In this document: positions 15,441 to 58,389 of the stretch, one piece after another
Layout of the letters: the number at the start of each line of letters is the position of its first letter
Numbering within the stretch: position 1 is the first letter of the stretch
Source of the DNA: Sminthopsis crassicaudata
Taxonomy: Eukaryota
Assembly (NCBI RefSeq): GCF_048593235.1
Contig: NC_133622.1
Location: 246,950,055-247,014,054 of the forward strand
Reading direction: 5' to 3'
Length of the DNA: 64,000 nucleotides
Program-made: the position numbers and the translations under genes
The notes under the pieces: generated by a model
Seen by the model: the letters and a program-made list of their open reading frames with translations, nothing else
Told to the model about the DNA's origin: nothing
Database searches by the model: none

Positions 15441-15593
15441 GATCACATGAGTCTTTACATGGATGTTCTCAGTGCCATGGTCTCTGCATCTGGGATTGGC
15501 GTCCTCTTCTACAGCTTATCTGTCCACCAGTTTCTCCAATGTGTTCGCCCTTCAGCAGGCAGCATATGTATCATGAGTGAAATCCTCCTTCAT
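15441..15593 (+). CDS. MS4A14: MS4A14-like exon 4 (TM3 and the two-cysteine extracellular loop, 51 aa)
   Basis: tctctttcag|GAT...CAT|gtaagt. MDVLSAMVSASGIGVLFYSL...CVRPSAGSIC follows the MS4A TM3 plus C...C loop pattern. Confidence 0.93.
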
Positions 15594-20819: not shown

Positions 20820-20924
20820 GGTATCCTGTCTGTCTTGCTGATCCTAATCATCATCCAATTCTCCATTGCTGCAATAGTCTTAGCCTTGAAGTGTAAAAGA
20901 ACAGGGGAAAGCTCTGCAGATGAG
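20820..20924 (+). CDS. MS4A14: MS4A14-like exon 5 (TM4, 35 aa); probable GC-AG donor
   Basis: ctcttgcag|GGT; GILSVLLILIIIQFSIAAIVLALKC is an MS4A TM4. No GT donor follows in frame. GAG|gcatgt fits a GC donor and keeps phase 0 with the acceptor at 22580. Confidence 0.85.
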
Positions 20925-22579
20925 GCATGTTCCACATCACTGAGAGAATCAAGACAGGCTGTGACATCTTGGAAGGTGACTGATTTGAGGGAATGGAATG
21001 AAGCACAGGAATCCTTTGAGGAGATAGCAGGGGGGAAGTTATATTAGTAAGGAAGTAGTAGGACATTTTCCACCTGGAAGAAATGTCCGCTATCTGGAGC
21101 TCAAAGAAGGCTGTTTCTTCCAACTTTCAGAAAGATTTCTTCTCCTTTTGTGCTTTTTTTTTTCTGGACCCAGAGCCCACATCCCTAATTGCCACTAGAC
21201 CCCTATGGTTTTAGGCCTGAGCTTGGCATTAAGAGAGTCATGGCTTAGAATCAACAACCACTGGTTTTATGACTGTGGACATTACATATTTAAATTGTCT
21301 GAGTCTGCATTCCATATGCAACTTGGGTGCATGAGAAGAGAGTGAATGTTCTTTGTAACACATACTTCAGAGAGTTTTGTCTTTTTTGTATGTGAAAACA
21401 CGCAGTATAGTCTTAGCAAAGTGCCCAAGAAAATACAAGAGAAAATATGAATATCTAATATTACTGTAACCTTGATCTTTGAGGGAAAGGAAAAATCTAG
21501 CACTCCCCTTGAAATTCTTGGATATGTTTATGAGTGCTTTTATGAAATGTTAACTGAACATTCAGAATTACTACATAAGGATTCAATTATTCTATATACA
21601 TAAGATCACCATATTTTCAAAAGATAATTAGTGGGAAAGAAGTTGAAAGGGAAATGAGAAAGTGTTCTGACATGAGCCTTGACCAAGGAATTCATCCCTC
21701 AGTGACCTTCTGTACCCTGAGCTGGACCAGTTCCAAGATGGCTCAACTTCCCAGGGGTCCTTGCTGAACCTTTTCCAGCATGGCAAAAATTGCTGTAGAT
21801 GAAATACCATTGGTACATGCTTTGAAAAGCTGGGTCATTTGTGTCTTCTGAAAAAAATTAGGGGACTGGAAGAGTTGTGCTTAATTCCAAATTAGGGCAG
21901 CTACCCATCCAATGAGTCGTTCATAAGTTCAAAATTCTATCCTTCTAAGACATTCAATAGTATGACTATAAAGTATGGAATCCCATCTAAGGTTGCCACA
22001 GGAAAAAAATATAAATAATGAATACCAGCTATTTGATTTTGGCTTATTTATTGCTTTGTTTAAAGATACATATTAAACCCAAAGAAACAGCACATTCTCC
22101 TGAAGAAATTATGTATCATTCTCTAATATAGCCTTAAGATACATTTTGGTGGGTAGAACCAAGAATTAGAAATTGTAAACAATTTTTGCCTTAGTGAAGG
22201 GAGAGGTAGTCAGTTCTTCCTTTGGATGAATCTAAAGTAAGTGTAAGCTATTTAAGAGAACAGGGTTGAACTATTCTACTTTACTATATTTAATTTTTTT
22301 TTTTTTTTGCTAATAAGAAGTACATAATTGTCACTTCCTAAATTCTCTATTGAGCACTGTACTTATCCTAGGGTGGAATATGATCAGAGTGGAAGTAAAG
22401 ATGTCCCAGTACCAAGGGGAAGAAAGGAAGATTTAATGAAGATAAGGAAGCAATTTAGAGAAGGCTGGGAATGTTTCGAAAGAGATAGATAGCTTTGAGG
22501 AGGAACTGTGGGAAGGATGATTTTTACAAGAAGTGACTATGGGGAGATTAATACCTCTCATTTCTGGTTGGCTTTATAG

Positions 22580-25500
22580 AATGTGTATTTCCGGTCTTCT
22601 GAAGTCAAGGAGCCTAAACAAACTGAGAATGTGGAAAACCAATTGCAGATCCAGATTGAGAAAAATCCTTCTGACAAAAATGAAGAAAAAAAATCAGTCT
22701 CCCTAATTAAGGGCTACACGTTCTTTAAACTAAGAGCTTTAGGAAGTCCTGTAACCCGCCCACCTCCTTGCACTACTACTCCTCCTCCCCCACCACCTCC
22801 TCCACCTCCTCCCCCACCACCTCCACCACCTTCCCCAAAAGTACCAGAAGAAAAGCTTCAAAAACAACGGTGCCCTACTCCAGCTTCTCCAAGTGAATCC
22901 TTGCAAATTTCATATTTCTCTGACCCAGGTTCATCAAGTGCATTGACACAAGGATCATCTTTCTTAGAACCATGCTCAATAGACAAATCTGTGCAAGTTT
23001 CCTCATATTCAGATCTAAGTTCAGGAGGAGAACTGACGGAATTTCCTCCTTCATCCAGCACAAGTTCAGTTAGTGAATCCACAAAATGTCTCTCTACCTC
23101 CAGCTCAGACGACGCCAATATTTGTCCCAAACAACCATCAGTGAGCATATCTGTGCAATTTCCTTCTGTCTCATGCACTACATCAAGAGAATTTGTAGGT
23201 ACCAAACGTTCAAGCATCCGTTTTGGGACCAAATCTGTGCAATGCCCTCCTATCTCGGGTACAACTTCCCCAACAGAAACAGAAAATGAAGATATCCTGA
23301 CCAAATGTTTGCAATTTCCTAATGTCTCATACACAATTTCTTCAACAGATGCTTTGGATACTTCAGACCATTTTAAACTGACCAAATCTGTACAATTTCC
23401 TTCTGTCTCATGCACAAATACAGCAATAGAATGCATAGATGCATCTGACTCTGCACTGACCAAATCTGTGCAATTCCCTTCTCTATCATGCATAGCTACA
23501 ACAACAGACGATTCAGCCTTCTTGTCACGGACAAAATCTGTGCAATGTCCTTCTGAATCAGGCATGCTTACAGCAAAAGACACCAAACTGACCAAGGCTA
23601 TGCAATTTCCTTCTAACTCGTGCATGGTTACAACAGAAGACAGCACACCTTCAGGCCTACTTGTACAAAGCAAGTCTATACAATTTCCTCCCTTCTCAAG
23701 CAGAACTACGTCACCAGATATCACAGATGCTGCACCTTCGTGCCAACTTGTACTGTCCAAATCTGTGCAATTCCCTTCTACCTCAGGCACAATTATACCA
23801 CCAGAAAGTCTTCCTCCATCCCATTTCAGTTCACTGCGTCAAACTATAGATACCACACCTTTCAGCACATGTGACCGATCTTCAACTCTGAAATCTCCAC
23901 CTCTCTCGCTCCCAGCTACACGGAGAACTACACCAGAAGCCACAGAAAGTGTTCCTCCATCCCATTTTAGTTCAATGCGTCAATCTGTACTAGATACCAC
24001 ACCTTACGGCTCACTTGACCTAACTACAAGTGTGATATCTCCACCTCCCTCAGGCCCAGCTACAAGAAGGACTACACCAGAAGTCCCAGAAAGTCTTCCA
24101 CCATCCCATTTCAGTTCAATGCGTCAAACTATGATAGATACTACACCTTATGGTTCACTTGACCTAACTACATCTGTGAAATCTCCACCTCCCTCAGAAC
24201 CAGCTACACGCAGGGCCACACCAGAAATCACAGAAAGTATTCCACCAACCCATTTTGGTTCAGTGCGTCAATCTATGATAGCTGCCACACCTTATACCTC
24301 ATTTGACCGAACTTCATCTGTGAAATCTCCACCTCCCTCGGTCCCAGCTACACGAAGGACTACACCAGAACCCATAGAAAGTCTTCCACCATCCCATTTC
24401 AGTTCAATGCGTCAATCTATGGTACCTGCCACACCTTTTGGCTCAATTGACCGAACTACATCTCTGAAATCTCCACCTCTCTCAGTCCCGGCCACACGAA
24501 GGACTACACCAGAACCCACAGAAAGTCTTCCGCCATCCCATTATGGTTCAGTACGTCAATCTATGATAGCTGCCATGCCTTTTGGCTCACTTGATGTGAC
24601 TACATCTGTGAAATCTCCACCTTCCTCGGTCCCAGGTACACGTAGGGCTACACCAGAAATTCCAGAAAATCAAGTCATGGAAGATTCCTCATTTCCAGGC
24701 CTTCTTGCACTGACTAAATCTATTCAATTTCCTTCTATCTCAGGCATGGCTATGCTAACAGAAGTCCCAGAAAATCAATCTCTGGAAGATACCACGGGCC
24801 TACTTGAGCTGAACAAGGCCATACAATTTCCTTCTCTCTCAAGCAGAGGCACATTATCAGAAGCCCCAGAAAGTCTTCCACCATCCCATTTCAGTTCAAT
24901 GCGCCCACCTATGATAGATGTCACACCTTATGGCTCACTTGACTTAACTCTGAAATCTCCACTTTCCTCTGTCCCGCCTACACGAAGAATCACACCAGAA
25001 GAAAGTCTTCCACCATCCCATTTTGGTTCTGTGCGTCAGTCTATGGTACCTGCCACACCTTTTGGCTCACTTGATCGAACTGTGAAATCTCCACCTCCCT
25101 CAGTCCCATCTACACGAAGGGCTACACCAGAAGCCACAGATTTTGGTTCAGTGCGTCAGTCTATGATAGCTGCCACGCCTTTTGGCTCACTGGACCTAAC
25201 TACATCTGTGAAATCTCCACCTTCCTCAGTCCCAGGTACACGTAGGGCTACACCAGACATTCCAGAAAATCAAGCCATGGAAGATGCCGCATATGCAGAC
25301 ATTCTAGCTCTGACTAAATCTGTTCAATTCCCTTCTATCTCAGGTATGCCAACAGAAGGGCCAGAAAATCAGCCTGTGGAAGACACCACACCTGCAGGAG
25401 TACTTGCCCTAACCAAGGGTATACAGTTTCCTTCTATATCAAGCAGAGGTGCATCAGCCGAAATCCCAGAGAGTCTTCCACCATCCCATTATAGTTCAAT

Positions 25501-28500
25501 GCGTCCACCTATGATAGATGCCACACCTTATAGCTCATTTGACCGAACTTCATCTGTGAAATCTCCACCTCCCTCAATGCCAGCTACACGAAGAACTACA
25601 CCAGAAATCCCAGAAAATTTTCCTCCATCCCATTTTGGTTCAGTGCGCCAATCTATAGTACCTGCCACACCTTTTGGCTCAGTTGATCGAACTGTGAAAT
25701 CTCCACCTCCCTCGGTCCCAGCTACACGAAGGACTACACCAGAACCCACAGAAAGTCTATCACCATCCCATTTTGGTTCAATGCGTCAATCTATGGTACC
25801 TGCCACACCTTTTGGCTCACTTGATCGAACTGTGAAATCTCCACCTCCCTCAGTCCTGGCTACACGAAGGACTACACCAGAACCCACAGAAAGTCTATTG
25901 CCATCCCATTATGGTTCAGTGCGTCAATCTATGATAGCTGCCATGCCTTTTGGTTCACTTGATGTGACTACATCTGTGAAATCTCCACCTTCCTCGATCC
26001 CAGGTACACGTAGGGCTACACCAGACATTCCAGAAAATCAAGCCATGGAAGATGCCGCATATGCAGACATTCTAGCTCTGACTAAATCTGTTCAATTTCC
26101 TTCTATCTCAGGCACGCCTATGCCAACAGAAGTCCCAGAAAATCAGCCTATGGAAGATACCATCCCTGCAAGCCTACTTGCGCTGACCAAGGGTATCCAG
26201 TTTCCTTCTATATCAAGCAGAGGTGCATCAGCCGAAATCCCAGAGAGTCTTCCACCATCCCATTATAGTTCAATGCGTCCACCTATGATAGATGCCACAC
26301 CTTATAGCTCATTTGACCGAACTTCATCTGTGAAATCTCCACCTCCCTCAGTCCCAGCTACACGAAGGGCTACACCAGAACCCACAGAAAGTCTATCGCC
26401 ATCCCATTATGGTTCAATGCGTCCACCTATGATAGATGCCACACCTTATAGCTCATTTGACCGAACTTCATCTGTGAAATCTCCACCTTCCTCAGTCCCG
26501 GCTACACGAAGGGCTACACCAGAACCCACAGAAAGTCTATCGCCATCCCATTATGGTTCAATGCGTCCACCTATGATAGATGCCACACCTTATAGCTCAT
26601 TTGACCGAACTTCATCTGTGAAATCTCCACTTTCCTCTGTCCCGGCTTCACGAAGAATCACACCAGAAGTCACAGAAAATTTTCCTCCATCCCATTTTGG
26701 TTCAGTGCGTCAATCTATGATAGCTGCCACACCTTATACCTCATTTGACCGAACTTCATCTGTGAAATCTCCACCTCCCTCACTCCCAGCTACACGAAGG
26801 ACTACACCAGAACCCACAGAAAGTCTATCACCATCCCATTATGGTTCAGTGCGTCAATCTATGATAGCTGCCACACCTTTTGGCTCACTTGACCTAACTA
26901 CATCTGTGAAATCTCCACCTTCCTCGGTCCCAGGTACACGTAGGGCTACACCAGACATTCCAGAAAATCAAGCCATGGAAGATGCTGCATATGCAGACCT
27001 TCTTGCACTGACTAAATCTGTTCAATTTCCTTCTATCTCCGGCATGGCTATGCCAACAGATATCCCAGAAAATCAGCTGATGGAAGACACCACAGGCATA
27101 CTTACCCTGAGCAAGGGTATACAATTTCCTTCTTTATCAAGCAGAGGTGCATCAGCCGAAATCCCAGAAAATCTTCCACCATCCAATTTCAGTTCAGTGC
27201 GTCAATCTATGGTAGATGCCACACCTTATGGCTTATTTAACCTGATTACATCTGTGAACCCTCCATCTCCCTCTGTCCCAGCTACACGAAGACCTACAGC
27301 AGCAGTCTCAGAAATTCCACCATCCCATTATGGTTCAGTGCGTCAAACTATGATAGATGCCACACCTTTTGGTCCAGTTGACCTATCTAGATCTGTGAAA
27401 TCTCCACTTTCCTCTGTCCCAGCTACCCGAAGGACTACACCAGAAGTTACAGAAAACCTACCATCCCATTTTAGTTCATTGCGTCAACCTATGGCAGATA
27501 CCACACATTTTGGTCCAGTTGACCTAATAATAGCAGTGCAATCTCCGTCTTCCTCTGTCCTACCTACACAAGGTATAGCAACTGAAGTCCCAGAAAATCA
27601 ATTCATGGAAGATACCATACTTTCAGGCCCCCATGCATTAACCAAATCTATTCAATTTCCTTTCATCTCAGGCCCAGCCACACCAATAGAAGTCTCAGAA
27701 AATCAATCCACTGAAGATGCCACAATTTCAGGCCCTCTTGTACGGTCCAAATCTGTGCAATTTCCTTCTATCTCAGGCACGGCTACACCTACAGAAGTCC
27801 CAGAAAATCTTCTATCCAATTTCAGTTCAATACCACAATCTATGGATGATACCACACCTTTTGACTTATTTAACGTGACTTCATCTGTGCAATCTCCACG
27901 TTCCTCTGCCCCAGTTCCACGAAGATCTACACCAACAGAATTCAGAGAAAATCGTCCTCTATCCAGTTTCGGTTTGTTGACTCATTCCACTGAAATTGCT
28001 CCACCTTTACGCTTTACCTTATCTATGCAATCTCTAATTTCCTCTGTCCCAACTACACCAAGGGTAATCACAGAAAACTCTCATCCATCCAATTTAAGTT
28101 CATTGACTCATTCCACTGAAATTGCTATACCTTTACACTTAATTGACCTGACCACACCTGTATTCATAGAAGCAGTACCTTTCACATCTACACAATCTCT
28201 ATTTACTTCTGCCCCAAGTGTTCCAAGAGAAATCTTGGAAGATCCTCATTTATCCATTTTAAACACATCATTTCAATCTACTGAAATTGCCACACCTTTT
28301 GGCTTACTTGACCTTGTCTCATTTTCACAATCTCCCCATTCTTCTGTCCTGACAACACTAACAGAGGTCTCAAAAAGTCCTCCTTTATCCAATTTAAGTC
28401 CATTGATTCAATCTACTGAAGGTACCATACATTCAAGCCCAAGTTTGCTGACCAAATCTGTGCAATTTCCTTCTCTCTCAGACACAGTTAACTCAACAGA

Positions 28501-31500
28501 AGTCCCAGGTAATCATCTTCCATCCAAATCCAATTCAATGACTCAATCTATGGAAGATGCCACATCTTTAGGCCCATTTTCACTGACCAAAGTTATACAG
28601 TTTCCTTCTATCTCAGGCTCAGTTACCTCAACAGAAGTCCCAGGAAATCCTCTTCCATCCAATTTCAGTTCAATGACTCAATCTATAGAAGACGCCACAC
28701 CTCCAAGCCCAAGTTTGCTGACCAAATTTGTGCAATTTCCTTCTATCTCAGGCCCGGCTACCTCAACAGACATCTCAGGAAACCCTCCTCCATCCAATTT
28801 CAATCCAATGACTCAATCTGTGGAAGATGCCCCACCTTCAGGTCCACGTTTGCTGACCAAATCTGTGCAATTTCCTTCTGTCTCAGGCTTGGCTGCCTCA
28901 ACAGAAGATTCAGGAAATCCTCCTCCATCCAATGTAAGTTTAATGACTCAATCTATGGAAGATGCCACACCTCCAAGCCCAAGTTTGCTGACCAAATCTG
29001 TGCAATTTCCTTCTATCTCAGGCCCGGCTATCTCAACAGAAGTCTCAGGAAATCCTCCTCCATCCAATTTAAGTTCAATGACTCAATATATGGAAGATGC
29101 CACACCTTCAAGCCCACATTTGCTGACCAAATCTGTGCAATTTCCTTCTATCTCAGGCCCAGCCATCTCAAGAGAAGTCTCAGGAAATCCTCTTCCATCC
29201 AATTTAAGTTCGATGATTAAATCCATGGAAGAAGAGAGACCTTCAGGCCTACTTGCCCTGAACGAATCTGTGCAACTTCCCTCTTTCTCAGGGCCAAGTA
29301 AATCAAATAAAATCATACAGATTCTCCCTTTCTCTTCCAAATCAAATTCACTCACAAACAAATCTGTGCATTTTCCCTCTTTTTCAGGTCCAAGTGCACC
29401 AATAGCTGAAGTTCCCTCTTTCTCTGCACTGAGCTCATCAAAGGAATCCACAAAACTTCTAATATCTGCAAGTAAATCTATACAATTCCATTCTTTCTCA
29501 GATTCTGTTCCAGCAAGTAAATTTATAAGTCCCTTTCCCCCTGACTCAAGTTCATCAAGGGAACCCATAGATGTTCCTTCTTTGGGATCTATTGCAATAA
29601 GCAAATCTTTGCAAGTATCTTTCTTGATTTCAAGTTTAGTCAAAGAATACACAGAGAGTCCATCTTTGCTAAGATTAAATTCAGGGTCAAAAATAAAAAA
29701 GGATCATCCTCCCTCTTTTCCAATTTTATCAAAAGAATCCATAGGAGCTCATTTTTCATATAACCTAATTTCAGAAAACAAAGGCATGCAGGTTCCTCGT
29801 GTTGAGATTTTTTTTTCAAATAAAGCTATCCAAATTCCCTCTATATGTGAAATACATTTAGTGAATGACTTTGCAGAAGTTCTGTGTGCATTCAGCTCAA
29901 GTCAATCAGGAAAATTTATACAATATCCCATTGCAGCTAGAATACTTTTAGAAAGCAAATCAGTGCAAGTTCCTTTTTCTGCTGCTATATTTTCTAAAAG
30001 TAAATCTATAAAATTTTCTTCTTCCTCTAGCGGAATTTCAATGACACAATCCACACAATGTCTTTCATTTTTTGACTCAACATCAAGTGAATGCATGGAA
30101 GTTCAATCTTTCTCAGTTCCACTTTCATCAAACAAATCCATACAAATTCTTTATTTCTCTGAGTCAAAATCATCAAAAGAAGACATACACTTTCTCTCAA
30201 CCTACCATACTACTGCTGTGAACAAACTGATGCAAGTATGTTTCTTTTCTGATATAGGTCCATCATCTCCACACAAAGCAGTTATAGCTTTGCCAGGTCC
30301 ACTTTTATCAAGAGAATCTAAGTTCCCCTTGGATTTTGTTGCTATTTTAAGCATAAAGCTTATTCGATTTCCTTCATTTTCTGATCAAAGTTCATCAGAC
30401 ACATATACACAGGAACTCCCATCTTTTCAAGTTGCAGTTTCATCACAAGAATATAGAAACGTTTGTACTTTCTCTGAAACTAATTCGCCAACAGAAGCTG
30501 CTACAGTTCCCTCTACTTATGGTGGCCTTATATTTGCCAAGTCTACACAAGTTTCTTTTATTTTTGTCTTAAGTTCATCAATAGTAATACCAGAAAAATT
30601 TATATCCTTCCCAGATCCACTTTTATCAAAGGAATCAATAGAACACAACTTCAATTTTATTATTAACTCACTTAGTAAACACACACATATTCCTGATATA
30701 TATTACCCAAGTTCATTAAATGTAAGCACAGAAGTTTCATCTTTCTTGCTTCCATTTTATCCAACAGAATCCAGGCAATTTTCTGATTCCTCTGACTCAA
30801 GCTGGCTGAGAAAAGTTAAAAAAATGTACTCTATCAATGGACCTATTTCAGTGAGAGAATGCACACAAATTTTTCACTCTTCTGATAAAAGTTTATCAAC
30901 AGAACCTTTACAATTACTGAGAGAAGATATAAATTTGCCTTCTAGTCATAGATCTATTTCAGTGAGACAATTCACACAAAGTTCTCATTCTTCTGATAAA
31001 TGTTTGCCAACAGAAAATTTACAGGTTCTTTCCATCGACTTTGATGTCAGAGTGAGCAACTTGACACAACTTTCTTCTCTGTTTGATGCAAATTCATCAA
31101 ATGAATGTATAAAAGAGGTTATATCTTTTCCAGTGCCACTTAAATTGAGAGAATCCAACCCAAATCTCTTGAACCTTGGTGTTAGTTCAGGCAGCAAGCT
31201 CAAACAAATTCCTTTTATCTTTGATCCAAGTTCATTACATAAGAACACATCTTTATCTTTCTTATTACCATTTTATCCAATAGAATCCAGGAAATTTTCT
31301 GATTTCTCTGTGATAAGTCTACTAAGAGAAAACATGCAAATTCCTTCTATCCTTGGAGCTATTTCAGTGAACAAATGCACAGTATTTTCTCACTCTTTTG
31401 ATAAATGTTTGCCAACAGAAACTTTACAAGTTCCCTCTACCCTCCTTGTTATCACAGTGAGCAAATCAATACTACAATCCTCCTTATCTGGAACAAGTTC

Positions 31501-32581
31501 ATCAACTGTATATCTAGAAAAAGTTGTTTGTTTGGCATGTTCTCTTTCACCAAGAGAATCCTTCCAAAATCCCTCAAATCTCGATGTGACTTCAGTCAGC
31601 AAGCTCACGAAATTTCCTCCTTTCTCTCACCCAAGTTCAATGAATGCCAAAACAGAAATTACATTTTTCTTGCTTCCATTTTGTCCAAAAGAATCCAAGC
31701 ACTTTTCTGATTTCTCTGACACAATGCTACCAAGACAAAAAGTACAAATTCCCTCTATACTTGGATCTCTTTCAATGAGTAAATGCACACAATTTTCTCA
31801 TACCTCTGATAAAAGCTTACCAACAGGAACTTTACAACTTTCCTCTACCCACCTTGCTGTCACAGTGAACAAATTAATGCAACATACTTTATTCTTTGAT
31901 GAAAGTTCATTAGCTGTAAGCATAGAAGAAGTTATACCTTTCCCATCCTTTCCAAAATCAAAGGAATCAATACAACATCCCTCAAACTTTGTTGATATTT
32001 TAGTCAGTAAGTCTGTTCAATTTTCTTCTTCCTCTGTTCTAAGTTCATTGAATATAAACATAAAAGAAGTTTCATCTTTCTTGCTTCTACTTTGTCCAAA
32101 AGAATCCAGAAAGTGTTTTGATTTCTTAAATATGAGTTTCTCTAGAGAAAATAGGCAAATTCTATCTATTCTTGGACTTATAACAGTAAGCAAAGACACA
32201 CAATTTTCTCTCTACTGTGAGAAAACTTTACCAACAGAAACTTTAAAAGGTCCCTCTATCAATCCTGCTATCACAGAAAGCAAGCCAATACAACCTACCT
32301 ACTTCTCTGATATGTCTTTCCTGGATTCACTAAAATCAAAGGAATCTATCCAACATCTCTCAAAACTCAGTAGTATTTCAGTTAACAAGTCCACCCAAAT
32401 TTCTTTTTTCTTTGTCCCAAGTTCATTGAATGTAAACACAGAAGAAGTTCCATCCTTCTTGCTTCCATTTTGTCAAACAGAATCCAAGCACTTTTCTGAT
32501 TTCTCTGACACAAGTTTACCAAAAGACGACACACAGAGGCTTTCTATCCTTGCACCTATTTCAGTGAGCAAAACCACATAA
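22580..32581 (+). CDS. MS4A14: MS4A14-like giant exon 6: 3,333-aa Ser/Thr/Pro-rich repetitive C-terminal tail
   Basis: Acceptor gctttatag|AAT in phase 0; open for 10,002 nt. The opening ENQLQIQIE...SLIKGYTFFKLRALGSP matches the start of the human MS4A14 last exon as I recall it (NDQLQFVLQE...SVIFGGYAFFKLTLSRSP). Confidence 0.9.
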   Translation, partial: NVYFRSSEVKEPKQTENVENQLQIQIEKNPSDKNEEKKSVSLIKGYTFFKLRALGSPVTRPPPCTTTPPPPPPPPPPPPPPPPPSPKVPEEKLQKQRCPTPASPSESLQISYFSDPGSSSALTQGSSFLEPCSIDKSVQVSSYSDLSSGGELTEFPPSSSTSSVSESTKCLSTSSSDDANICPKQPSVSISVQFPSVSCTTSREFVGTKRSSIRFGTKSVQCPPISGTTSPTETENEDILTKCLQFPNVSYTISSTDALDTSDHFKLTKSVQFPSVSCTNTAIECIDASDSALTKSVQFPSLSCIATTTDDSAFLSRTKSVQCPSESGMLTAKDTKLTKAMQFPSNSCMVTTEDSTPSGLLVQSKSIQFPPFSSRTTSPDITDAAPSCQLVLSKSVQFPSTSGTIIPPESLPPSHFSSLRQTIDTTPFSTCDRSSTLKSPPLSLPATRRTTPEATESVPPSHFSSMRQSVLDTTPYGSLDLTTSVISPPPSGPATRRTTPEVPESLPPSHFSSMRQTMIDTTPYGSLDLTTSVKSPPPSEPATRRATPEITESIPPTHFGSVRQSMIAATPYTSFDRTSSVKSPPPSVPATRRTTPEPIESLPPSHFSSMRQSMVPATPFGSIDRTTSLKSPPLSVPATRRTTPEPTESLPPSHYGSVRQSMIAAMPFGSLDVTTSVKSPPSSVPGTRRATPEIPENQVMEDSSFPGLLALTKSIQFPSISGMAMLTEVPENQSLEDTTGLLELNKAIQFPSLSSRGTLSEAPESLPPSHFSSMRPPMIDVTPYGSLDLTLKSPLSSVPPTRRITPEESLPPSHFGSVRQSMVPATPFGSLDRTVKSPPPSVPSTRRATPEATDFGSVRQSMIAATPFGSLDLTTSVKSPPSSVPGTRRATPDIPENQAMEDAAYADILALTKSVQFPSISGMPTEGPENQPVEDTTPAGVLALTKGIQFPSISSRGASAEIPESLPPSHYSSMRPPMIDATPYSSFDRTSSVKSPPPSMPATRRTTPEIPENFPPSHFGSVRQSIVPATPFGSVDRTVKSPPPSVPATRRTTPEPTESLSPSHFGSMRQSMVPATPFGSLDRTVKSPPPSVLATRRTTPEPTESLLPSHYGSVRQSMIAAMPFGSLDVTTSVKSPPSSIPGTRRATPDIPENQAMEDAAYADILALTKSVQFPSISGTPMPTEVPENQPMEDTIPASLLALTKGIQFPSISSRGASAEIPESLPPSHYSSMRPPMIDATPYSSFDRTSSVKSPPPSVPATRRATPEPTESLSPSHYGSMRPPMIDATPYSSFDRTSSVKSPPSSVPATRRATPEPTESLSPSHYGSMRPPMIDATPYSSFDRTSSVKSPLSSVPASRRITPEVTENFPPSHFGSVRQSMIAATPYTSFDRTSSVKSPPPSLPATRRTTPEPTESLSPSHYGSVRQSMIAATPFGSLDLTTSVKSPPSSVPGTRRATPDIPENQAMEDAAYADLLALTKSVQFPSISGMAMPTDIPENQLMEDTTGILTLSKGIQFPSLSSRGASAEIPENLPPSNFSSVRQSMVDATPYGLFNLITSVNPPSPSVPATRRPTAAVSEIPPSHYGSVRQTMIDATPFGPVDLSRSVKSPLSSVPATRRTTPEVTENLPSHFSSLRQPMADTTHFGPVDLIIAVQSPSSSVLPTQGIATEVPENQFMEDTILSGPHALTKSIQFPFISGPATPIEVSENQSTEDATISGPLVRSKSVQFPSISGTATPTEVPENLLSNFSSIPQSMDDTTPFDLFNVTSSVQSPRSSAPVPRRSTPTEFRENRPLSSFGLLTHSTEIAPPLRFTLSMQSLISSVPTTPRVITENSHPSNLSSLTHSTEIAIPLHLIDLTTPVFIEAVPFTSTQSLFTSAPSVPREILEDPHLSILNTSFQSTEIATPFGLLDLVSFSQSPHSSVLTTLTEVSKSPPLSNLSPLIQSTEGTIHSSPSLLTKSVQFPSLSDTVNSTEVPGNHLPSKSNSMTQSMEDATSLGPFSLTKVIQFPSISGSVTSTEVPGNPLPSNFSSMTQSIEDATPPSPSLLTKFVQFPSISGPATSTDISGNPPPSNFNPMTQSVEDAPPSGPRLLTKSVQFPSVSGLAASTEDSGNPPPSNVSLMTQSMEDATPPSPSLLTKSVQFPSISGPAISTEVSGNPPPSNLSSMTQYMEDATPSSPHLLTKSVQFPSISGPAISREVSGNPLPSNLSSMIKSMEEERPSGLLALNESVQLPSFSGPSKSNKIIQILPFSSKSNSLTNKSVHFPSFSGPSAPIAEVPSFSALSSSKESTKLLISASKSIQFHSFSDSVPASKFISPFPPDSSSSREPIDVPSLGSIAISKSLQVSFLISSLVKEYTESPSLLRLNSGSKIKKDHPPSFPILSKESIGAHFSYNLISENKGMQVPRVEIFFSNKAIQIPSICEIHLVNDFAEVLCAFSSSQSGKFIQYPIAARILLESKSVQVPFSAAIFSKSKSIKFSSSSSGISMTQSTQCLSFFDSTSSECMEVQSFSVPLSSNKSIQILYFSESKSSKEDIHFLSTYHTTAVNKLMQVCFFSDIGPSSPHKAVIALPGPLLSRESKFPLDFVAILSIKLIRFPSFSDQSSSDTYTQELPSFQVAVSSQEYRNVCTFSETNSPTEAATVPSTYGGLIFAKSTQVSFIFVLSSSIVIPEKFISFPDPLLSKESIEHNFNFIINSLSKHTHIPDIYYPSSLNVSTEVSSFLLPFYPTESRQFSDSSDSSWLRKVKKMYSINGPISVRECTQIFHSSDKSLSTEPLQLLREDINLPSSHRSISVRQFTQSSHSSDKCLPTENLQVLSIDFDVRVSNLTQLSSLFDANSSNECIKEVISFPVPLKLRESNPNLLNLGVSSGSKLKQIPFIFDPSSLHKNTSLSFLLPFYPIESRKFSDFSVISLLRENMQIPSILGAISVNKCTVFSHSFDKCLPTETLQVPSTLLVITVSKSILQSSLSGTSSSTVYLEKVVCLACSLSPRESFQNPSNLDVTSVSKLTKFPPFSHPSSMNAKTEITFFLLPFCPKESKHFSDFSDTMLPRQKVQIPSILGSLSMSKCTQFSHTSDKSLPTGTLQLSSTHLAVTVNKLMQHTLFFDESSLAVSIEEVIPFPSFPKSKESIQHPSNFVDILVSKSVQFSSSSVLSSLNINIKEVSSFLLLLCPKESRKCFDFLNMSFSRENRQILSILGLITVSKDTQFSLYCEKTLPTETLKGPSINPAITESKPIQPTYFSDMSFLDSLKSKESIQHLSKLSSISVNKSTQISFFFVPSSLNVNTEEVPSFLLPFCQTESKHFSDFSDTSLPKDDTQRLSILAPISVSKTT
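22781..22831 (+). repeat. Polyproline tract (17 Pro)
   Basis: Seventeen consecutive CCT/CCC/CCA codons. Confidence 0.95.
23809..27900 (+). repeat. Coding tandem array: ~21 units of 144/138 nt (48/46 aa) interleaved with pairs of ~35-aa KSVQF modules
   Basis: Unit ESLPPSHF(S/G)S(M/V)RQSM(I/V)xATP(Y/F)GSxDxTxSVKSPPxSVPATRRxTPE; e.g. starts at 23946, 24090 and 24234 (144-nt period). Confidence 0.95.
28440..29290 (+). repeat. Coding tandem array of 135-nt (45-aa) units, 6-7 copies
   Basis: ctgaccaaa recurs at 28448, 28583, 28718, 28853, 28988 and 29123. Confidence 0.95.
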
Positions 32582-32611
32582 TTTACTCACTCATCTTGTT
32601 AAACTTTTTAA

Positions 32612-35600
32612 AAGTTTAACAACGGAAATTTTACAAGTTCTTTCCACCCACCTTGCTGTCACAAAGAGCACATCTACTTTGTTGACGTAAGTTCAGCAAC
32701 TATAAATACAGAAGAAGCTATGTCTTTCTCAGGCCAACATAAATCACAGAAATCTATCCAAGATCATGCAAGCCTTGGTATTCTTTCAGTGAATAAGTCC
32801 ACCCAAGTTTCTTCTTCCTCTGTCCCAAGTTCATTGAATGAGAGCACAAAAGAAATTTTAAATTTCTTATTTCCATTTTGTCCAACAGAATCCAGGCAAT
32901 TTTCTGATAGCTCTGATACTTGCCTACCAAAAGATGACTCACAAAAACCTCCTAACTTTGGAACTCTTTCAGTGAGCAGCTGCACACAACTTTCTCACTC
33001 CTCTCACAAAAGTTTAACCACAGAAAGTTTACCAGTTTCCTCTGCTGATCTTGCTGTCATACAGAGCAAATGGACACAAACTACTTCCTCATTGGACAAA
33101 AGTCCATCAGGAGTAGACATAAAAGAAAGGATACCTTTCTCAGGTTCATTAAAATCAAGAGAATCCATCCAACATCTCTCAAACCTTGGAGATGATGTAG
33201 TTAACAAGTCCACCCAAGTTTCTTCTTCCTCTTTTCTAAGTTCAGTAAATGTGAACAGAAAAGAAGCTCCATCTGTCTTGCTTCCATTTCATCCAACAGA
33301 ATCCAAGGACCTGTCCAATTTTGACACAGATCTACCAAAAGAAGACACAGAAAGGCTTACTATCCCTGAACCTATTTCAGTGAGCAGCCAAATACAACTC
33401 TCTCAGTCCTCTCATAAGAGTTTAACAGAAATTTTAACAGTTCCCTCTACTGATATTGCTGTTAAAGAGAACAAATGGACACAAATTACTTCCTCATTAG
33501 ATGTAAGTCCATCAGGGGTAGGTATAAAAGAAGCTATGTCTATCTCAGGTTCGCTAAAATCAAAGGAATCCATCCAACATCTCTCAAACCTTAGTCTTGT
33601 TTTACCCAGCAAGTCCACCCAAGTTTCTTCTTCCTCTTTCGTAAGTTCAGTGAATGTGAACATAGAAGAAGCCCCAGAAAGGCTTACTATCCCTAAACCT
33701 AGTTCAGTGAGCAGCCAAATACAACTCTCTCAGTCCTCTCAGAAGAGTTTAACAGAAATTTTACCAGTTCCCTCTATCCATCTTGCTCTCACAGAGAACA
33801 AATGGACACAAATTACTTCCTCATTAGATGTAAGTCCATCAGGGGTAGGTATAAAAGAAACTATGTCTGTCTCAGGTTCACTAAAATCAAAGGAATCCAT
33901 CCAACATCTCTCAAACCTTAGTCTTGTTTTACCCAGCAAGTCCACCCAAGTTTCTTCTTCCTCTTTCGTAAGTTCAGTGAATGTGAACACAGAAGCAGCC
34001 CCAGAAAGGCTTACTATCCCTAAACCTATTTCAGTGAGCAGCCAAATACAACTCTCTCAGTCCTCTCACAAGAGTTTAACAGAGATTTTACCAGTCCCCT
34101 CTATCCATCTTGCTGTCAAAGAGAGCAAATGGACACAAATTACTTCCTCATTAGATGTAAGTCCATCAGGGGTAGGTATAAAAGAAACTATGTCTGTCTC
34201 AGGTTCACTAAAATCAAAGGAATCCATCCAACATCTCTCAAACCTTAGTCTTGTTTTACCCAGCAAGTCCACCCAAGTTTCTTCTTCCTCTTTCGTAAGT
34301 TCAGTGAATGTGAACACAGAAGAAGCCCAAGAAAGGCTTACTATCCCTGAACCTAGTTCAGTGAGCAGCCAAATACAACTCTCTCAGTCCTCCCATAAGA
34401 GTTTAACAGAAATTTTACCAGTTCCCTCTATCCATCTTGCTCTCACAGAGAACAAATGGACACAAACTACTTCCTTATTGGATGTAAGTCCATCAGGGGT
34501 ACATATAAAAGAAGCGCTGTCTGTCTCAGGTTCACTAAAATCTAAGGAATCCATCCAACATCTCTCAAACCTTAGTCTTGTTTTAGTCAGCAAGTCCACC
34601 CAAGTTTCTTCTTCCTCTTTCGTAAGTTCAGTGAATGTGAACACAGAAGACCAAGAAAGTCTTACTATCCCTGAACCTATTTCAGTAAGCAGCCAAATGC
34701 AACTTTCTCAGTCCCCTCATAAGAGTTTAACAGAAATTTTACCAGTTTCCTCTACTGATATTGCTGTGTCACAGAGCAAATGGACACAAACTACTTCCTT
34801 ATTAGATGTAAGTTCATCAGGGGTAGGCATAAAAGAAGCTACCTCTTTTACATCTGTTACGTCTGTCTCAGGTTCACTAAAATCAAAAGAATCCATCGAA
34901 CATCTCTCAAACCTTAGTCTTGTTTTAGTCAGCAAGTCCACCCAAGTTTCTTCTTCCTCTTTCGTAAGTTCAGTGAATGTGAGCACAGAAGAAGCCCAAG
35001 AAAGACTTACTATCTCTGAACCTATTTCAGTGAGCAGCCAAATACAACTTTCTCACTCCTCTCACAAGAGTTTAACAGAGATTTTACCAGTCAGAGAGAG
35101 CAAATGGACACAAACTACTTCCTTATTGGATGTAAGGCCATCAGAGGTAGGTATAAAAGAAGCTATGTCTGATTCAGTTTCACTAAAATCAAAGGAATCT
35201 ATCCAATCTCTCTCAAACCATAGTCTTGTTTTACTCAGCAAGTCCACCCAAGTTTCTTCTTCCTCTTTCGTAAGTTCAGTGAATGTGAACACAGAAGCAG
35301 CTCCATCTGTTTTGCTTCCATTTCATCCAAAAGAATCCAGGCAGCTGTCTGGCTTTGAAACAGGTCTACCAAAAGAAGAAATACAAAAGCCTACTATCCC
35401 TGAACCTATTTCAGTGAGTAGTCAAATACAACTTTCTCAGTCCTCTCATAAAAGTTTAACAGAAGAAATTTTACCAGTTCCCTCTACCCATCTTGCTATC
35501 ACAGAGAGGAAAATGACACAATCCACTTCCTCATTGGATATAAGTCCATCAGGGGTAGGCATAAAAGAAGCTCTATCTGTCTCAGGTTCACTAAAATCAA

Positions 35601-38600
35601 AGGAATCCATCCAACATCTCTCAAACCTTAGTCTTGTTTTACCCAGCAAGTCCACCCAAGTTTCTTCTTCATCTTTCCTGCGTTTCTTGAAAGTGAAAGA
35701 AGAAGCTCAATCTAGCTTGCTTCCATATTATCCAAGAGAATCCAGACAGCTATCTGACTTTGACAGAGGTCTACCAAAAGATGACAAAGAAAAGCCTACT
35801 ATCCCTGAACCTATTTCAGTAAGAAGTCAAAAACTTTCTCGGTCCTCTCCTAAAAGTTTAAAAGCAGAAACTGTACCAATTCCCTCTACCCATCTTGCTC
35901 TCATAGAAAGTAAATCAAAACAGTCTACTCCTTTATTTAATGCAAGTTCATCAGCTGTAGGCATAAAAGAAGTGATGTCTTTCCAGCTTTCACTAAAATC
36001 AAAGGAATCTATCCAAGATATCACAAACCTTGGTATTATTTCGATCAATAAGTCCACCCAAGTTTCTTCTTCCTCTGTCCCAAGTTCATTGAATGAGAAA
36101 ACGAAAGAAATTCTACATTTCTTGTTTCCATTTTGTCCAGTAGAATCGAGGCAATTTTCTGATATTTCTGACACTTGCCTACTAAAAGAAGAACGACAAA
36201 GGACTTCTCTCATACCTATTTCACTGAGCAAATGCACACAATTTTCTCATTCTTCTCATAAAAGTTTAACAGAAACTTTACCACTTCCCTCCACCTGTCT
36301 TGCTGTCACAGAGAGCAAATCGAAACAATCTAGTTCCTTAATTAAGTCAAGTTCATTAGTTGTAGGAATAGAAGAAGCTATGTCTTTCTCAGGGTCACTA
36401 AAATCAAAGGAATCCATCGAACATCTCTCAAACCTTAGTCTTGTTTTACTCAGCAAGTCCACCCAAGTTTCTTCTTCCTCTTTCCTAAGTTCAGTGAATG
36501 TGAAGGCAGAAGAAGCTCCATCAGTCTTGCTTTCATTTCATCCAAAAAAATCCAGGCAGCTGTCTGACTTTGACACAGGTTTACCAAAAGAAGAAACAGA
36601 AAAACCTATCATCCCTGAACCTATTTCAGTGAGCAGCCAAATAGAACTTTCCCACTCTTCTCATAAAAGTTTAACAGAAATTTTACCAGTCCCCTCTATC
36701 CATCTCCCTCTCACAGAGAGCAAATGGACACAAACTTCTTCCTTATTGGATATAAATCCATCAGGAGTAGGCATAAAAGAAGCTATATCTGTCTCAGGTT
36801 CATTAAAATCAAAGGAATCCATCCAATCTCTCTCAAACCTTAGTCTTGTTTTACTTAGCAAGTCCACCCAAGTTTCTTCTTCCTCTTTTGTAAGTTCAGT
36901 GAATGTGAACATAGAAGCCCCAGAAAGGCTTACTATCCCTGAACCTATTTCAGTGAGCAGCCAAATAGAATTTTCCCACTCCTCTCATAAAAGTTTAACA
37001 GAAATTTTACCCATTCCCTCTATCCATCTCGTTGTCACAGAGAACAAATGGACACAAACTTCTTCCTTATTGGATGTAAGGCCATCACGGATGGGTATAA
37101 AAGAAGCGATGTCTTTTACATCTGTTACGTCTGTCTCAGGTTCACTAAAATCAAAAGAATCCATCGAACATCTCTCAAACCTTAGTCTTGTTTTACTCAG
37201 CAAGTCCACCCAAGTTTCTTCTTCCTCTTTCGTAAGTTCAGTGAATGTGAACACAGAAGAAGCCCCATCTGTCTTGCTTCCACTTCATCCAAAAGAATCC
37301 AGGCAATTGTCTGATATTGACACAGGTCTATCAAAAGACGACACAGAAAAGCCTACTGTCCCTGAACCTATTTCAGTGAGCAGCCAAATACAACTCTCTC
37401 AGTCCTCTCATAAAAGTTTAACAGAGATTTTACCAGTTCCCTCTATCCATCTTGCTGTCAAGCCTACTATCTCTGAACCTATTTCAGTGAGCAGCCCAAT
37501 CCAACTATCTCAGTCCTCTCATAAAAGTTTAACGGAAGAAATTTTATCAGTTCCCTCTATCCATCTTGCTGTCAAGCCTACTATCTCTGAACCTATTTCA
37601 GTGAGCAGCCCAATCCAACTATCTCAGTCCTCTCATAAAAGTTTAACAGAAGAAATTTTACCAGTTGCCTCTATCCATCTTGCTGTCAAGCTTACTATCT
37701 CTGAACCTATTTCAGTGAGCAGCCCAATCCAACTAGCTCAGTCCTCTCATAAAAGTTTAACGGAAGAAATTTTACGAGTTCCCTCTATCCATCTTGCTGT
37801 CAAACCTACTATCTCTGAACCTATTTCAGTGAGCAGCCCAATCCAACTATCTCAGTCCTCTCATAAAAGTTTAACAGAAGAAATTTTACCAGTTCCCTCT
37901 ATCCATCTTGCTGTCAAAGAGAGCAAATGGACACAAACTACTTCCTTATTGGATGTAAGTCCATCAGGGCTAGGCACAAAAGAAGCTATATCTGTCTCAG
38001 GTTCATTAAAATCAAAGGAATCCATCCAACACATTTCAAATCTTAGTCTTGTTTTAATCAGCAAGTCCACCCAAGTTTCTTCTTCCTCTTTTGTAAGTTC
38101 AGTGAATGTGAACACAGAAGAAGCCCAAGAAAGGCTTACTATCCCTGAACCTAGTTCAGTGAGCAGCCAAATACAACTCTCTCAGTCCTCTCATAAAAGT
38201 TTAACAGAGATTTTACCAGTTCCCTCTATCCATCTTGCTGTCACACAGAGCAAATGGACACAAACTACTTCCTTATTGGATGTAAGTCCATCAGGGCTAG
38301 GCACAAAAGAAGCTATATCTGTCTCAGGTTCATTAAAATCAAAAGAATCCATCGAACATCTCTCAAACCTTAGTCTTGTTTTAGTCAGCAAGTCCACCCA
38401 AGTTTCTTCTTCCTCTTTCGTAAGTTCAGTGAATGTGAACATAGAAGAAGCCCCAGAAAGGCTTACTATCCCTGAACCTATTTCAGTGAGCAGCCAAATA
38501 CAACTCTCTCAGTCCTCTCATAAAAGTTTAACAGAGATTTTACCAGTTCCCTCTATCCATCTTGCTGTCACACAGAGCAAATGGACACAAACTACTTTCT

Positions 38601-39835: not shown

Positions 39836-39839
39836 TAAA
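39834..39839 (+). terminator. Candidate poly(A) signal overlapping the ORF2 stop
   Basis: AAT TAA TAA AG contains AATAAA, with ttgtttgt about 20 nt downstream. Confidence 0.35.
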
Positions 39840-44690: not shown

Positions 44691-44692
44691 TA

Positions 44693-44966: not shown

Positions 44967-45047
44967 GAAAGGAAGAGATATGTGTGAATTCTTCCTACAC
45001 CATTAATAAGATTTATGTGGTACAAAATCATCAATGGCTTATATCTC

Positions 45048-58380: not shown

Positions 58381-58389
58381 GAAAACAAT

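What the first reader, a model, noticed from the sequence alone, without database searches (positions are those of the whole stretch)
22580..32581. Giant MS4A14: a four-pass membrane protein with a ≥3,300-aa repetitive tail encoded by one ≥10-kb exon
Six exons splice cleanly in phase 0 into a 3,536-aa ORF (203 + 3,333). The first ~55 aa of exon 6 match the start of the human MS4A14 terminal exon as I recall it. Beyond that the tail is a lineage-specific, array-built, probably disordered polymer. MS4A proteins are normally ~200-300 aa and human MS4A14 about 700 aa, so this is about five times longer. Human MS4A14 is testis-enriched, so a giant marsupial sperm or spermatid membrane scaffold is a plausible inference.
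Basis: partly seen in the sequence, partly recalled or inferred. Interest (0 to 1): 0.88.

Follow-up and report, generated by a model that had tools for sequence, protein, structure and literature searches.

The report
Giant-tailed MS4A membrane protein gene
A marsupial gene of the CD20/MS4A four-pass membrane family ends in one 10-kb exon that stays open for 3,333 codons of repeats, so it probably makes a protein about fifteen times the usual family size; opossum and koala carry the same oddity, and nobody has described it.

Summary
Window 22580-32581 (+) is open for 3,333 codons. The other five frames carry 84-305 stops, and shuffled sequence never stays open beyond 249 codons. All tandem-repeat periods in it are multiples of 3.

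Five upstream exons, all in phase 0, encode a CD20-like four-pass domain (Pfam PF04103). An alternative exon-5 donor gives 3,553 aa.

The exon-6 acceptor is the one used in koala and opossum RefSeq models. Opossum LOC103098466 is modelled at 5,589 aa. The koala tail is open for 1,166 codons and aligns colinearly with ours (30% identity, E 2.5e-85). So the giant tail is a marsupial trait; only the arrays are lineage-specific.

Repeat copies evolve at dN/dS near 1, yet no stops or frameshifts accumulate. The one conserved element is a short motif, [KT]-S-[VI]-Q-[FV]-P-S-x-S-G.

The tail is most likely a cytoplasmic, disordered, multivalent docking polymer. Translation, testis expression and MS4A14 orthology are plausible but were not tested here.

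The protein's end is uncertain. The same frame reopens for 2,404 codons after a small cluster of lesions.

The scan's three other notes lie on this same window; none is on other DNA.

The parts
3878..4036 (+). Exon 1 coding part: ATG plus 53 codons for a very basic N-terminus (15 K/R of 53), donor GTAGGT
   Evidence: tblastn with wallaby P0001 (74% identity) and opossum P0003 (52%); sequence
11770..11907 (+). Exon 2, 46 codons: TM1, the first outer loop and the start of TM2
   Evidence: Pfam PF04103 CD20, E 3.8e-7, 30.7 bits against a cut-off of 27.9; splice sites cacag| and |GTGAGT
12911..12964 (+). Exon 3, 18 codons: rest of TM2
   Evidence: tblastn with P0001, 83% identity; splice sites tcacag| and |GTAAGA
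15441..15593 (+). Exon 4, 51 codons: TM3 and the second outer loop, with two cysteines invariant in all four marsupials
   Evidence: tblastn; alignment A1; splice sites tttcag| and |GTAAGT
20820..20975 (+). Exon 5: TM4. It ends either at 20924 (donor GAG|GCATGT, 35 codons) or at 20975 (donor AAG|GTGACT, 52 codons). Both ends are in phase 0.
   Evidence: Koala has GAG|GTAAGC at the site homologous to 20925. The wallaby model uses the downstream donor.
22580..32581 (+). Exon 6 coding part: 3,333 codons plus TAA, the giant repetitive tail
   Evidence: the acceptor context is identical in koala
22580..22753 (+). Segment next to the membrane, the best-conserved part of the whole protein
   Evidence: 87% identity to wallaby, 68.5% to opossum, 57% to koala; invariant columns in A1
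22779..22837 (+). Proline run; the point where the wallaby model leaves this reading frame
23231..23779 (+). About seven short units (25-30 aa), each ending in the K-S-V-Q-F-P-S motif
23802..27809 (+). Higher-order arrays: 40-48-aa units (P-S-H-F ... A-T-R-R) interleaved with pairs of 33-35-aa motif units
   Evidence: TRF periods 144, 432, 132, 120, 138, 141 and 105 at 78-90% identity; motif positions
28360..29296 (+). Seven 45-aa units, each carrying the motif
   Evidence: TRF period 135, 6.9 copies, 83% identity, no indels
29297..32578 (+). Diverged units of about 135 aa, of the same type as in the second open frame and in opossum residues 985-1731
   Evidence: tblastn with P0006, 27.5% identity over 847 columns, E 2e-24
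32579..32690 (+). Lesion cluster: CAA>TAA, a 10-nt insertion that forms a palindrome, and a 13-nt deletion (net -3 nt)
32621..39835 (+). Second open stretch in the same frame: 2,404 codons without a stop
39836..45100 (+). Decayed repeats of the same family, with stops in all frames; probably 3' untranslated sequence
   Evidence: 72, 68 and 59 stops in the three frames; opossum matches jump between frames

Best explanation
This is the terminal coding exon of a marsupial MS4A (CD20-like) gene, probably the counterpart of eutherian MS4A14.

Shown by the sequence:
- Five small exons encode a four-pass membrane anchor.
- Exon 6 adds 3,333 residues rich in Ser, Pro and Thr, built from arrays of units 25-135 aa long.
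- Selection keeps the frame open but leaves most residues free to change.
- The conserved parts are a 55-aa segment next to the membrane and a short motif, [KT]-S-[VI]-Q-[FV]-P-S-x-S-G, present about 26 times.

Inferred:
- Both termini of MS4A proteins face the cytoplasm, and the residues flanking the membrane domain are basic. The tail is therefore a cytoplasmic, unfolded polymer, about 1 micrometre long if fully extended, tethered to the membrane.
- It most likely works as a multivalent docking strip that concentrates a partner at the membrane.
- The motif fits the RVxF docking consensus of protein phosphatase 1.
- 21 R-R-x-S/T sites fit kinases that prefer basic residues.
- By analogy with eutherian MS4A14, this would happen in spermatids or sperm.
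For: Frame maintenance:
- 0 stops in 3,333 codons, against 84-305 in the other frames.
- All repeat periods are multiples of 3.
- Given the substitutions seen in 2.3 kb of clean arrays, 5 stops are expected and none is seen (P = 0.0045).
- The decayed zone downstream has about 4 stops per 100 codons in every frame.

MS4A family:
- PF04103 scores above its cut-off.
- A profile of the marsupial proteins hits the IgE receptor beta chain (3e-10) and CD20 (4e-6) in the PDB.

Conservation:
- Opossum RefSeq models the gene at 5,589 and 5,422 aa.
- Koala and opossum models use the same exon-6 acceptor.
- The koala tail is open for 1,166 codons and colinear with ours.
- The I/V-S-Y-F-S landmark after the proline run is in our frame in all three species.

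Motif:
- Q-[FV]-P occurs 26, 38 and 36 times in ours, koala and opossum, against 1-2 expected.
- 13 copies fit the strict RVxF consensus and 26 the loose one.
- R-R-x-S/T occurs 21 times, against 1.2 expected.

No fold:
- The tail has no Pfam family.
- AlphaFold2 on a 137-aa unit with 21 paralogous copies gives pLDDT 52 and pTM 0.11, with almost no secondary structure.

Eutherian MS4A14:
- It has the long C-terminus (PMC2826416).
- It stains spermatids and sperm (PMC9290968).
- It carries phosphosites in the tail in sperm (PMC7894524, PMC8322956).
Against: - There is no transcript or peptide evidence for this species.
- The nearest relative's model (wallaby, 321 aa) leaves the frame in the proline run, and the koala model (244 aa) splices out early.
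- Opossum also has isoforms of 670-1,232 aa, so the giant form may be a minor product.
- dN/dS among copies is 0.8-1.5, so most of the tail has no residue-level constraint.
- MS4A14 orthology was not shown.
- The basic residue that an RVxF motif needs is present in only 50-64% of koala and opossum copies.
- The charge-hydropathy measure does not place the tail on the disordered side.
- Both structure models rest on shallow alignments.
Confidence: 0.68

Rival explanations
1. The gene is real, but the giant frame is rarely or never translated in full. The usual products would be short isoforms that splice out of, or end early in, exon 6. On this view the long open frame mostly reflects recent amplification of units that happened to be open.
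For: - Opossum isoforms X3-X6 are 670-1,232 aa.
- The koala model is 244 aa and the wallaby model 321 aa.
- Arrays are young, at 83-94% identity.
- dN/dS among copies is about 1.
Against: - Much of the ORF lies outside young arrays yet has no stop.
- Five stops are expected in the clean arrays alone.
- Open tails persist in koala and opossum despite only about 30% protein identity.
- The neighbouring decayed zone shows what neutral decay looks like.
Confidence: 0.2
2. The gene is a marsupial-specific or otherwise different MS4A paralogue whose long tail arose independently. On this view it is not the orthologue of MS4A14.
For: - No eutherian MS4A14 was recovered by any search.
- Foldseek lists MS4A15, CD20, MS4A3, MS4A7 and others at 15-21% identity, but not MS4A14.
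- A 2010 survey found no MS4A14 in opossum (PMC2826416, Table S1).
Against: - MS4A14 is the only family member described with a long C-terminal extension (PMC2826416).
- The nearest ESM Atlas cluster to the opossum isoform is a 706-aa chordate CD20-family cluster (a lead only).
- In wallaby a 243-aa CD20-family gene lies just upstream on the same strand, as MS4A7 (240 aa) does in human; the human gene order is from my own knowledge.
- The searches that failed were weak for this question.
Confidence: 0.3
3. The array is an assembly artefact: repeats were wrongly expanded, collapsed or joined, so the stated length is unreliable.
For: - The region holds more than 20 kb of related repeats.
- An odd palindromic lesion sits at 32590-32615.
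- The wallaby and koala counterparts show frame changes.
Against: - There are no N runs in the region.
- Copies differ by 6-24%, enough to place long reads.
- The order of repeat types matches koala and opossum.
- Misassembly would not preserve a 10-kb frame.
Confidence: 0.05
4. The tail is an extracellular, heavily glycosylated mucin-like domain, as the NCBI name 'mucin-2-like' for opossum isoforms suggests.
For: - 32-44% of residues are Ser, Thr or Pro.
- The NCBI name for the opossum isoforms.
Against: - There are four membrane helices with basic flanks: 15 K/R in the 53-aa N-terminus and K-C-K-R just after TM4.
- Solved MS4A structures have both ends in the cytoplasm.
- Eutherian MS4A14 tails are phosphorylated and ubiquitylated in sperm (PMC7894524).
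- There is no signal peptide.
Confidence: 0.04

Closest known systems
Opossum LOC103098466 (RefSeq XP_056657641.1, 5,589 aa; shorter isoforms are named 'mucin-2-like')
   Same: - The exon order is the same.
- The membrane domain is 40-52% identical.
- The segment next to the membrane is 68.5% identical.
- The Q-F-P-S motif arrays are shared.
- Opossum residues 985-1731 align to window 30041-32443.
   Different: - Most of the opossum tail (residues 1,731-5,589) has no counterpart here.
- Our 48-aa P-S-H-F ... A-T-R-R units are absent from opossum.
- The opossum entry is a computed model without a name or a publication.
Eutherian MS4A14 (human 679 aa; testis, spermatids and sperm)
   Same: - A four-pass MS4A anchor followed by a long repetitive C-terminal tail encoded by a large last exon.
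- The human tail contains V-Q-F-P once (PMC2826416, Fig. S1).
   Different: - Our protein is about five times longer.
- No significant sequence match was obtained here.
- Orthology and expression were not tested.
CD20 (MS4A1) and the IgE receptor beta chain (MS4A2), which have solved structures
   Same: The CD20-like four-helix membrane domain (PF04103). The marsupial profile hits them at 4e-6 and 3e-10. The second outer loop carries two cysteines.
   Different: Those proteins are 240-300 aa with short tails. Their partners and functions (B-cell antigen, receptor subunit) are not implied here.
PP1-docking proteins with an RVxF motif
   Same: K-S-V-Q-F fits both the strict and the loose RVxF consensus. 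There are 13 strict and 26 loose copies, against 0.3 and 2.7 expected.
   Different: - Known PP1 partners usually carry one RVxF motif, not dozens.
- No binding test was done.
- The basic residue is variable in koala and opossum.

Membership tests
MS4A / CD20-like family (Pfam PF04103) | Match to the family profile above its curated cut-off | tested here: met
   Exon 2 alone scores 30.7 bits against a cut-off of 27.9, E 3.8e-7. The wallaby orthologue is precomputed as PF04103.
MS4A / CD20-like family (Pfam PF04103) | Four hydrophobic membrane helices with both ends in the cytoplasm | tested here: met
   There are four hydrophobic stretches, in exons 2-5. The model has helices at 41-69, 79-103, 110-140 and 147-191. 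The flanks are basic. The orientation is inferred, not measured.
MS4A / CD20-like family (Pfam PF04103) | Sequence similarity to members with solved structures | tested here: met
   IgE receptor beta chain 3e-10; CD20 4e-6
MS4A14 orthologue | Reciprocal best match to, or tree grouping with, eutherian MS4A14 rather than another paralogue | tested here: inconclusive
   No eutherian sequence could be retrieved. Foldseek with a model of pLDDT 44 lists other paralogues at 15-21% identity.
MS4A14 orthologue | Long C-terminal cytoplasmic extension encoded by the last exon | tested here: met
   PMC2826416 describes this feature for human and bovine MS4A14.
MS4A14 orthologue | Position between MS4A7 and MS4A5 in the MS4A cluster | tested here: inconclusive
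   Wallaby has a 243-aa CD20-family gene just upstream. No MS4A exon was recognised in window 45-64 kb.
MS4A14 orthologue | Expression in testis, spermatids and sperm | not testable with these tools
   No expression data are available here. The eutherian data are in PMC9290968 and PMC11663944.
RVxF-type PP1-docking proteins | [HKR]-[ACHKMNQRSTV]-V-[CHKNQRST]-[FW] in an accessible region | tested here: met
   13 strict copies against 0.3 expected and 26 loose copies against 2.7 expected, all in low-complexity sequence
RVxF-type PP1-docking proteins | Binding to the PP1 catalytic subunit | not testable with these tools
   This needs a pull-down or a peptide-binding assay.
Mucins | Extracellular or luminal Pro/Thr/Ser-rich domain behind a signal peptide | tested here: not met
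   The composition fits. But the tail follows TM4 of a four-pass protein with a basic cytoplasmic flank, and there is no signal peptide.

The most novel reading that the evidence does not exclude
Marsupials keep a micrometre-long polymer tethered to the membrane, a giant MS4A14 tail, whose dozens of K-S-V-Q-F-P-S docking motifs and R-R-x-T-P sites would form a phosphatase/kinase signalling strip or condensate under the sperm membrane. Its repeat number would turn over quickly between lineages, perhaps under sperm competition. The true product here may be nearly 6,000 aa if the lesion at 32579-32690 is an assembly error or a variant of one haplotype.
Probability: 0.15. Interest if true: 0.8.

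Novelty: new variant of a known kind. Interest (0 to 1): 0.52.

Why it matters
MS4A proteins are small (200-300 aa) membrane adaptors. A form of 3,500-5,600 aa, kept across the roughly 80 million years separating American and Australian marsupials, is unrecognised in the literature. The 2010 family survey lists no MS4A14 in opossum, and databases call the opossum product 'uncharacterized' or 'mucin-2-like'.

It offers a clean natural case of a repeat-built tail in which selection preserves only the reading frame and one short motif. It also gives a concrete, testable handle on the unknown function of MS4A14: what binds the Q-F-P-S motif.

A practical point follows as well. Gene annotation handles this locus inconsistently between species, with models of 244, 321 and 5,589 aa.

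Tried and rejected
- The whole 3,333-aa tail against 5.8 billion proteins of 1,833-5,833 aa gave no hit. The opossum cluster is represented by its 1,232-aa isoform, which falls outside that length range.
- The opossum 670-aa isoform, residues 1-300, against proteins of 369-1,172 aa gave no hit at E <= 0.001. No eutherian MS4A14 sequence was therefore in hand, and I did not type one from memory.
- An AlphaFold2 model of the wallaby N-terminal part was poor (pLDDT 44). The Foldseek ranking of paralogues is therefore not trusted.
- ESM Atlas searches returned only generic CD20-family clusters.
- The wallaby locus came back without DNA, and the opossum X1 isoform is too long for the contig look-up. 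Cross-species codon tests were therefore limited to koala.
- I looked for a splice that would skip the lesion at 32579-32690 and found no donor matching 7 of 9 consensus positions. The counterpart of the small last exon of opossum isoform X3 (near 42821) lacks an AG acceptor here.
- I searched Figure S1 of PMC2826416 for the human and bovine segment next to the membrane. That block is not recoverable from the stored text.
- No MS4A exon of a neighbouring gene was recognised in 1-3877 or 45100-64000.
- Pfam hits in the second open frame (VPS28, LAGLIDADG and others) have no single significant stretch. I rejected them as summed noise from repeats.
Full report
OBSERVATION

Window 22580-32578 (+) is an unbroken run of 3,333 sense codons ending at TAA 32579-32581. 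That frame has no stop, while the other five frames of the same 10 kb have 197, 135, 305, 84 and 225. Shuffled sequence of the same composition gives a longest open frame of 133 codons on average and 249 at most. Tandem Repeats Finder reports arrays with periods of 12, 24, 105, 120, 132, 135, 138, 141, 144 and 432 inside the frame. All are multiples of three, and most arrays have no indels. The frame begins exactly at a splice acceptor, ctttatag|AAT, whose TAG is the upstream stop. The feature is real and far beyond chance.

GENE MODEL

A translated segment at 11719-12000 matches Pfam CD20 (PF04103) above its curated cut-off (30.7 against 27.9 bits, E 3.8e-7). A tammar wallaby protein (P0001, 321 aa, CD20 domain) matched the start of exon 6 at 87% identity. 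Aligned back to the window, it marks six exons in order.

With the splice sites read from the sequence the coding exons are 3878-4036, 11770-11907, 12911-12964, 15441-15593, 20820-20924 and 22580-32581, all in phase 0.

The 203-aa version needs a GC donor (GAG|GCATGT at 20925). Koala has GAG|GTAAGC at the homologous position, and the opossum and koala proteins join at that point. The GC site is therefore the ancestral donor position. The wallaby model instead uses the next GT, 51 nt downstream (20976), which adds 17 in-frame residues and gives 3,553 aa. Without RNA I cannot say which is used.

The encoded N-terminal part has four hydrophobic helices, a very basic N-terminus (15 K/R of 53) and K-C-K-R directly after the fourth helix. 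A profile of the marsupial proteins hits the IgE receptor beta chain (3e-10) and CD20 (4e-6) among solved structures. Membership of the MS4A family is secure.

RELATIVES

A full HMMER scan of 1.84 billion representative proteins with the first 407 residues of exon 6 found only a koala protein (P0002, 1.8e-23), an opossum protein (P0003, 4.1e-17) and one spurious proline-rich bacterial protein.

The opossum cluster is RefSeq LOC103098466. Its isoforms X1 and X2 are 5,589 and 5,422 aa ('uncharacterized protein'), and X3-X6 are 1,232, 1,227, 1,220 and 670 aa ('mucin-2-like'). The 5,589-aa protein has the same layout: a four-pass domain, the conserved segment next to the membrane, then thousands of residues of Ser/Pro-rich repeats. 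Its residues 196-249 match window 22583-22744 at 68.5% identity. Residues 323-831 match the motif arrays. Residues 985-1731 match 30041-32443 (E 2e-24), always in the frame of the ORF. Most of residues 1,731-5,589 have no counterpart here.

Koala DNA was retrievable (L001). The exon-6 acceptor context is identical to ours. The koala tail is open for 1,166 codons and is followed by further open segments of 370, 1,213 and 312 codons in shifted frames. Its first segment aligns colinearly with ours at 29.7% identity over 1,273 columns (E 2.5e-85).

The giant tail is therefore an old marsupial feature, and only the arrays are lineage-specific. After the proline run, all three species share an I/V-S-Y-F-S landmark in our frame. 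The wallaby model follows the +2 frame and stops at 321 aa, so the wallaby model is the odd one out, either through a real frameshift or through an error in a C-rich run.

IS IT TRANSLATED?

There is no direct evidence. The indirect evidence is strong for maintenance of the frame and weak for constraint on residues.

- Among copies within arrays, dN/dS is 0.83-1.46, and third codon positions show no excess of change.
- Between this species and koala, dN/dS is 0.74 for exon 4 and 0.65 for the first 58 codons of exon 6, so the whole gene evolves fast.
- I placed the observed number and kind of substitutions at random on the consensus of three clean arrays (2.3 kb). This yields about 5 stops, where none is seen (P = 0.0045).
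- Most of the frame is more diverged than those arrays.
- The adjoining zone 39836-45100, made of the same repeat family, has 72, 68 and 59 stops in its three frames. That is what neutral decay looks like here.
- Tails at about 30% protein identity still keep frames of 1,166 to 5,400 codons in three lineages.

I read this as selection for an uninterrupted translated polymer whose exact sequence matters little.

WHAT IS CONSERVED?

Two things are conserved. The first is the 55-aa segment right after the fourth helix (Y-F-x-x-S-E-[VI]-x-E-P-K-Q-T ... S-L-I-x-x-Y-T-F-F-K-L-R). It is better conserved than the membrane domain itself.

The second is a short motif, [KT]-S-[VI]-Q-[FV]-P-S-[FIL]-S-G. 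The core Q-[FV]-P occurs 26 times in our tail, 38 times in the koala segments and 36 times in opossum, against 1-2 expected. In our copies the lysine three residues before the Q is present in 96% and the serine five residues after it in 100%.

K-S-V-Q-F fits the RVxF docking consensus of protein phosphatase 1, with 13 strict and 26 loose matches against 0.3 and 2.7 expected. In koala and opossum the basic residue is present in only 50-64% of copies. Our lineage also has 21 R-R-x-S/T sites against 1.2 expected, mostly as A-T-R-R-[AT]-T-P in the 48-aa units.

No Pfam family matches any part of the tail. AlphaFold2 on a 137-aa unit, with 21 paralogous copies as the alignment, gives pLDDT 52 and pTM 0.11 with almost no secondary structure. 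Ser, Thr and Pro make up 32-44% of residues. The charge-hydropathy measure does not classify the tail as unfolded, because its net charge is near zero. 'Disordered' is therefore likely but not proven, least of all for the more hydrophobic last third.

MECHANISM (INFERRED)

MS4A proteins have both ends in the cytoplasm, and the basic flanks agree with that here. The tail would then be a cytoplasmic polymer anchored to the membrane, about 1.2 micrometres long if fully extended. It would carry a proline run and dozens of copies of one docking motif.

The most economical reading is a multivalent tether that concentrates a partner under the membrane. PP1 is the named candidate, with kinase sites in between.

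Eutherian MS4A14 is the only described MS4A with a long C-terminal extension (PMC2826416). It stains spermatids and spermatozoa (PMC9290968), is listed as testis-expressed (PMC11663944), and carries phosphorylated and ubiquitylated tail residues in buffalo and boar sperm (PMC7894524, PMC8322956). This fits a cytoplasmic sperm-membrane role. The human tail contains V-Q-F-P once (PMC2826416, Fig. S1).

Orthology itself stays unproven. No eutherian sequence could be retrieved with the capped searches. A 55-aa match would in any case be too weak for libraries of that size. Foldseek with a poor model (pLDDT 44) lists other paralogues at 15-21% identity and not MS4A14. Indirect support comes from the nearest ESM Atlas cluster, a 706-aa CD20-family cluster of chordates, and from a 243-aa CD20-family gene just upstream in wallaby.

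WHERE THE PROTEIN ENDS

Directly after the TAA the same frame has two more stops and then reopens for 2,404 codons (32621-39832). Alignment with five paralogous units shows three lesions within 110 nt:

- a CAA>TAA change;
- a 10-nt insertion that makes a perfect palindrome with the following bases;
- a 13-nt deletion that restores the frame.

I found no convincing splice that would skip this cluster. Zero lesions in the next 7.2 kb, against three in 110 nt, means one of three things. The truncation is very recent, or the lesion is an assembly or haplotype peculiarity, or the second frame is translated in some other way. If the frames were read together, the product would be about 5,950 aa, on the scale of the opossum model.

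SPECIES

The N-terminal part is 80.7% identical to wallaby, 52.2% to opossum and 48.7% to koala, while koala and opossum are 63% identical to each other. This species and wallaby therefore share derived changes. That points to a kangaroo or possum relative rather than a dasyurid, and to faster evolution of the membrane domain in that lineage.

VERDICT

The MS4A identity, the exon model and the giant repetitive tail are supported. MS4A14 orthology, testis expression and translation of the full frame are plausible but untested. The trait is not unique to this lineage, since an unnamed 5,589-aa opossum model already sits in RefSeq. I found no paper that describes it.

Noticed in passing
window 32579-32690: The frame is broken by three clustered lesions, seen by comparison with five paralogous units: CAA>TAA, a 10-nt insertion that forms a perfect palindrome with the next bases, and a 13-nt deletion that restores the frame.
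   Followed up: yes
window 32621-39835: A second stretch of 2,404 codons without a stop lies in the same frame. It is built of 109- and 135-aa units at 76-94% identity and has no Q-F-P motif at all; the motif position reads K-S-T-Q-V-S-S-S-S.
   Followed up: partly
window 39836-45100: Repeats of the same family have decayed here, with stops in all frames. They resemble the opossum K-S-T-Q-V-P-x-F-S-D units more than the open part does. The sequence near 42821 resembles the small last exon of opossum isoform X3 but has no AG acceptor.
   Followed up: partly
window 20925 and 20976: The ancestral exon-5 donor, which is GT in koala, is GC here. The next GT lies 51 nt downstream, and those 17 codons are open in both this species and wallaby. 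This is either a GC-AG intron or a young exon extension.
   Followed up: partly
L001 23908-33003 (koala): The koala tail consists of four open segments (1,166, 370, 1,213 and 312 codons) separated by frame changes. RefSeq splits the locus into a 244-aa model and a separate 411-aa model.
   Followed up: partly
wallaby locus (no DNA): The wallaby model leaves the conserved frame in the proline run and ends at 321 aa. A 663-aa gene is called on the opposite strand just downstream, probably a by-product of the C-rich array.
   Followed up: no
window 22858-23790 (-): A 310-aa open frame lies antisense to the repeat array. It is probably a by-product of the strong C-over-G skew.
   Followed up: no
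window 267-437 and 10236-10724 (+): Open segments that look like the end of a LINE-1 second reading frame. They lie upstream of the gene and in intron 1.
   Followed up: no
window 2968-3024 (+): A weak match to exon 2 (E 0.17) with an in-frame stop, about 900 nt upstream of the start codon. It is either a relic exon or chance.
   Followed up: no
window 6479-6651: The only N run of the window lies in intron 1. I left it as it is.
   Followed up: no
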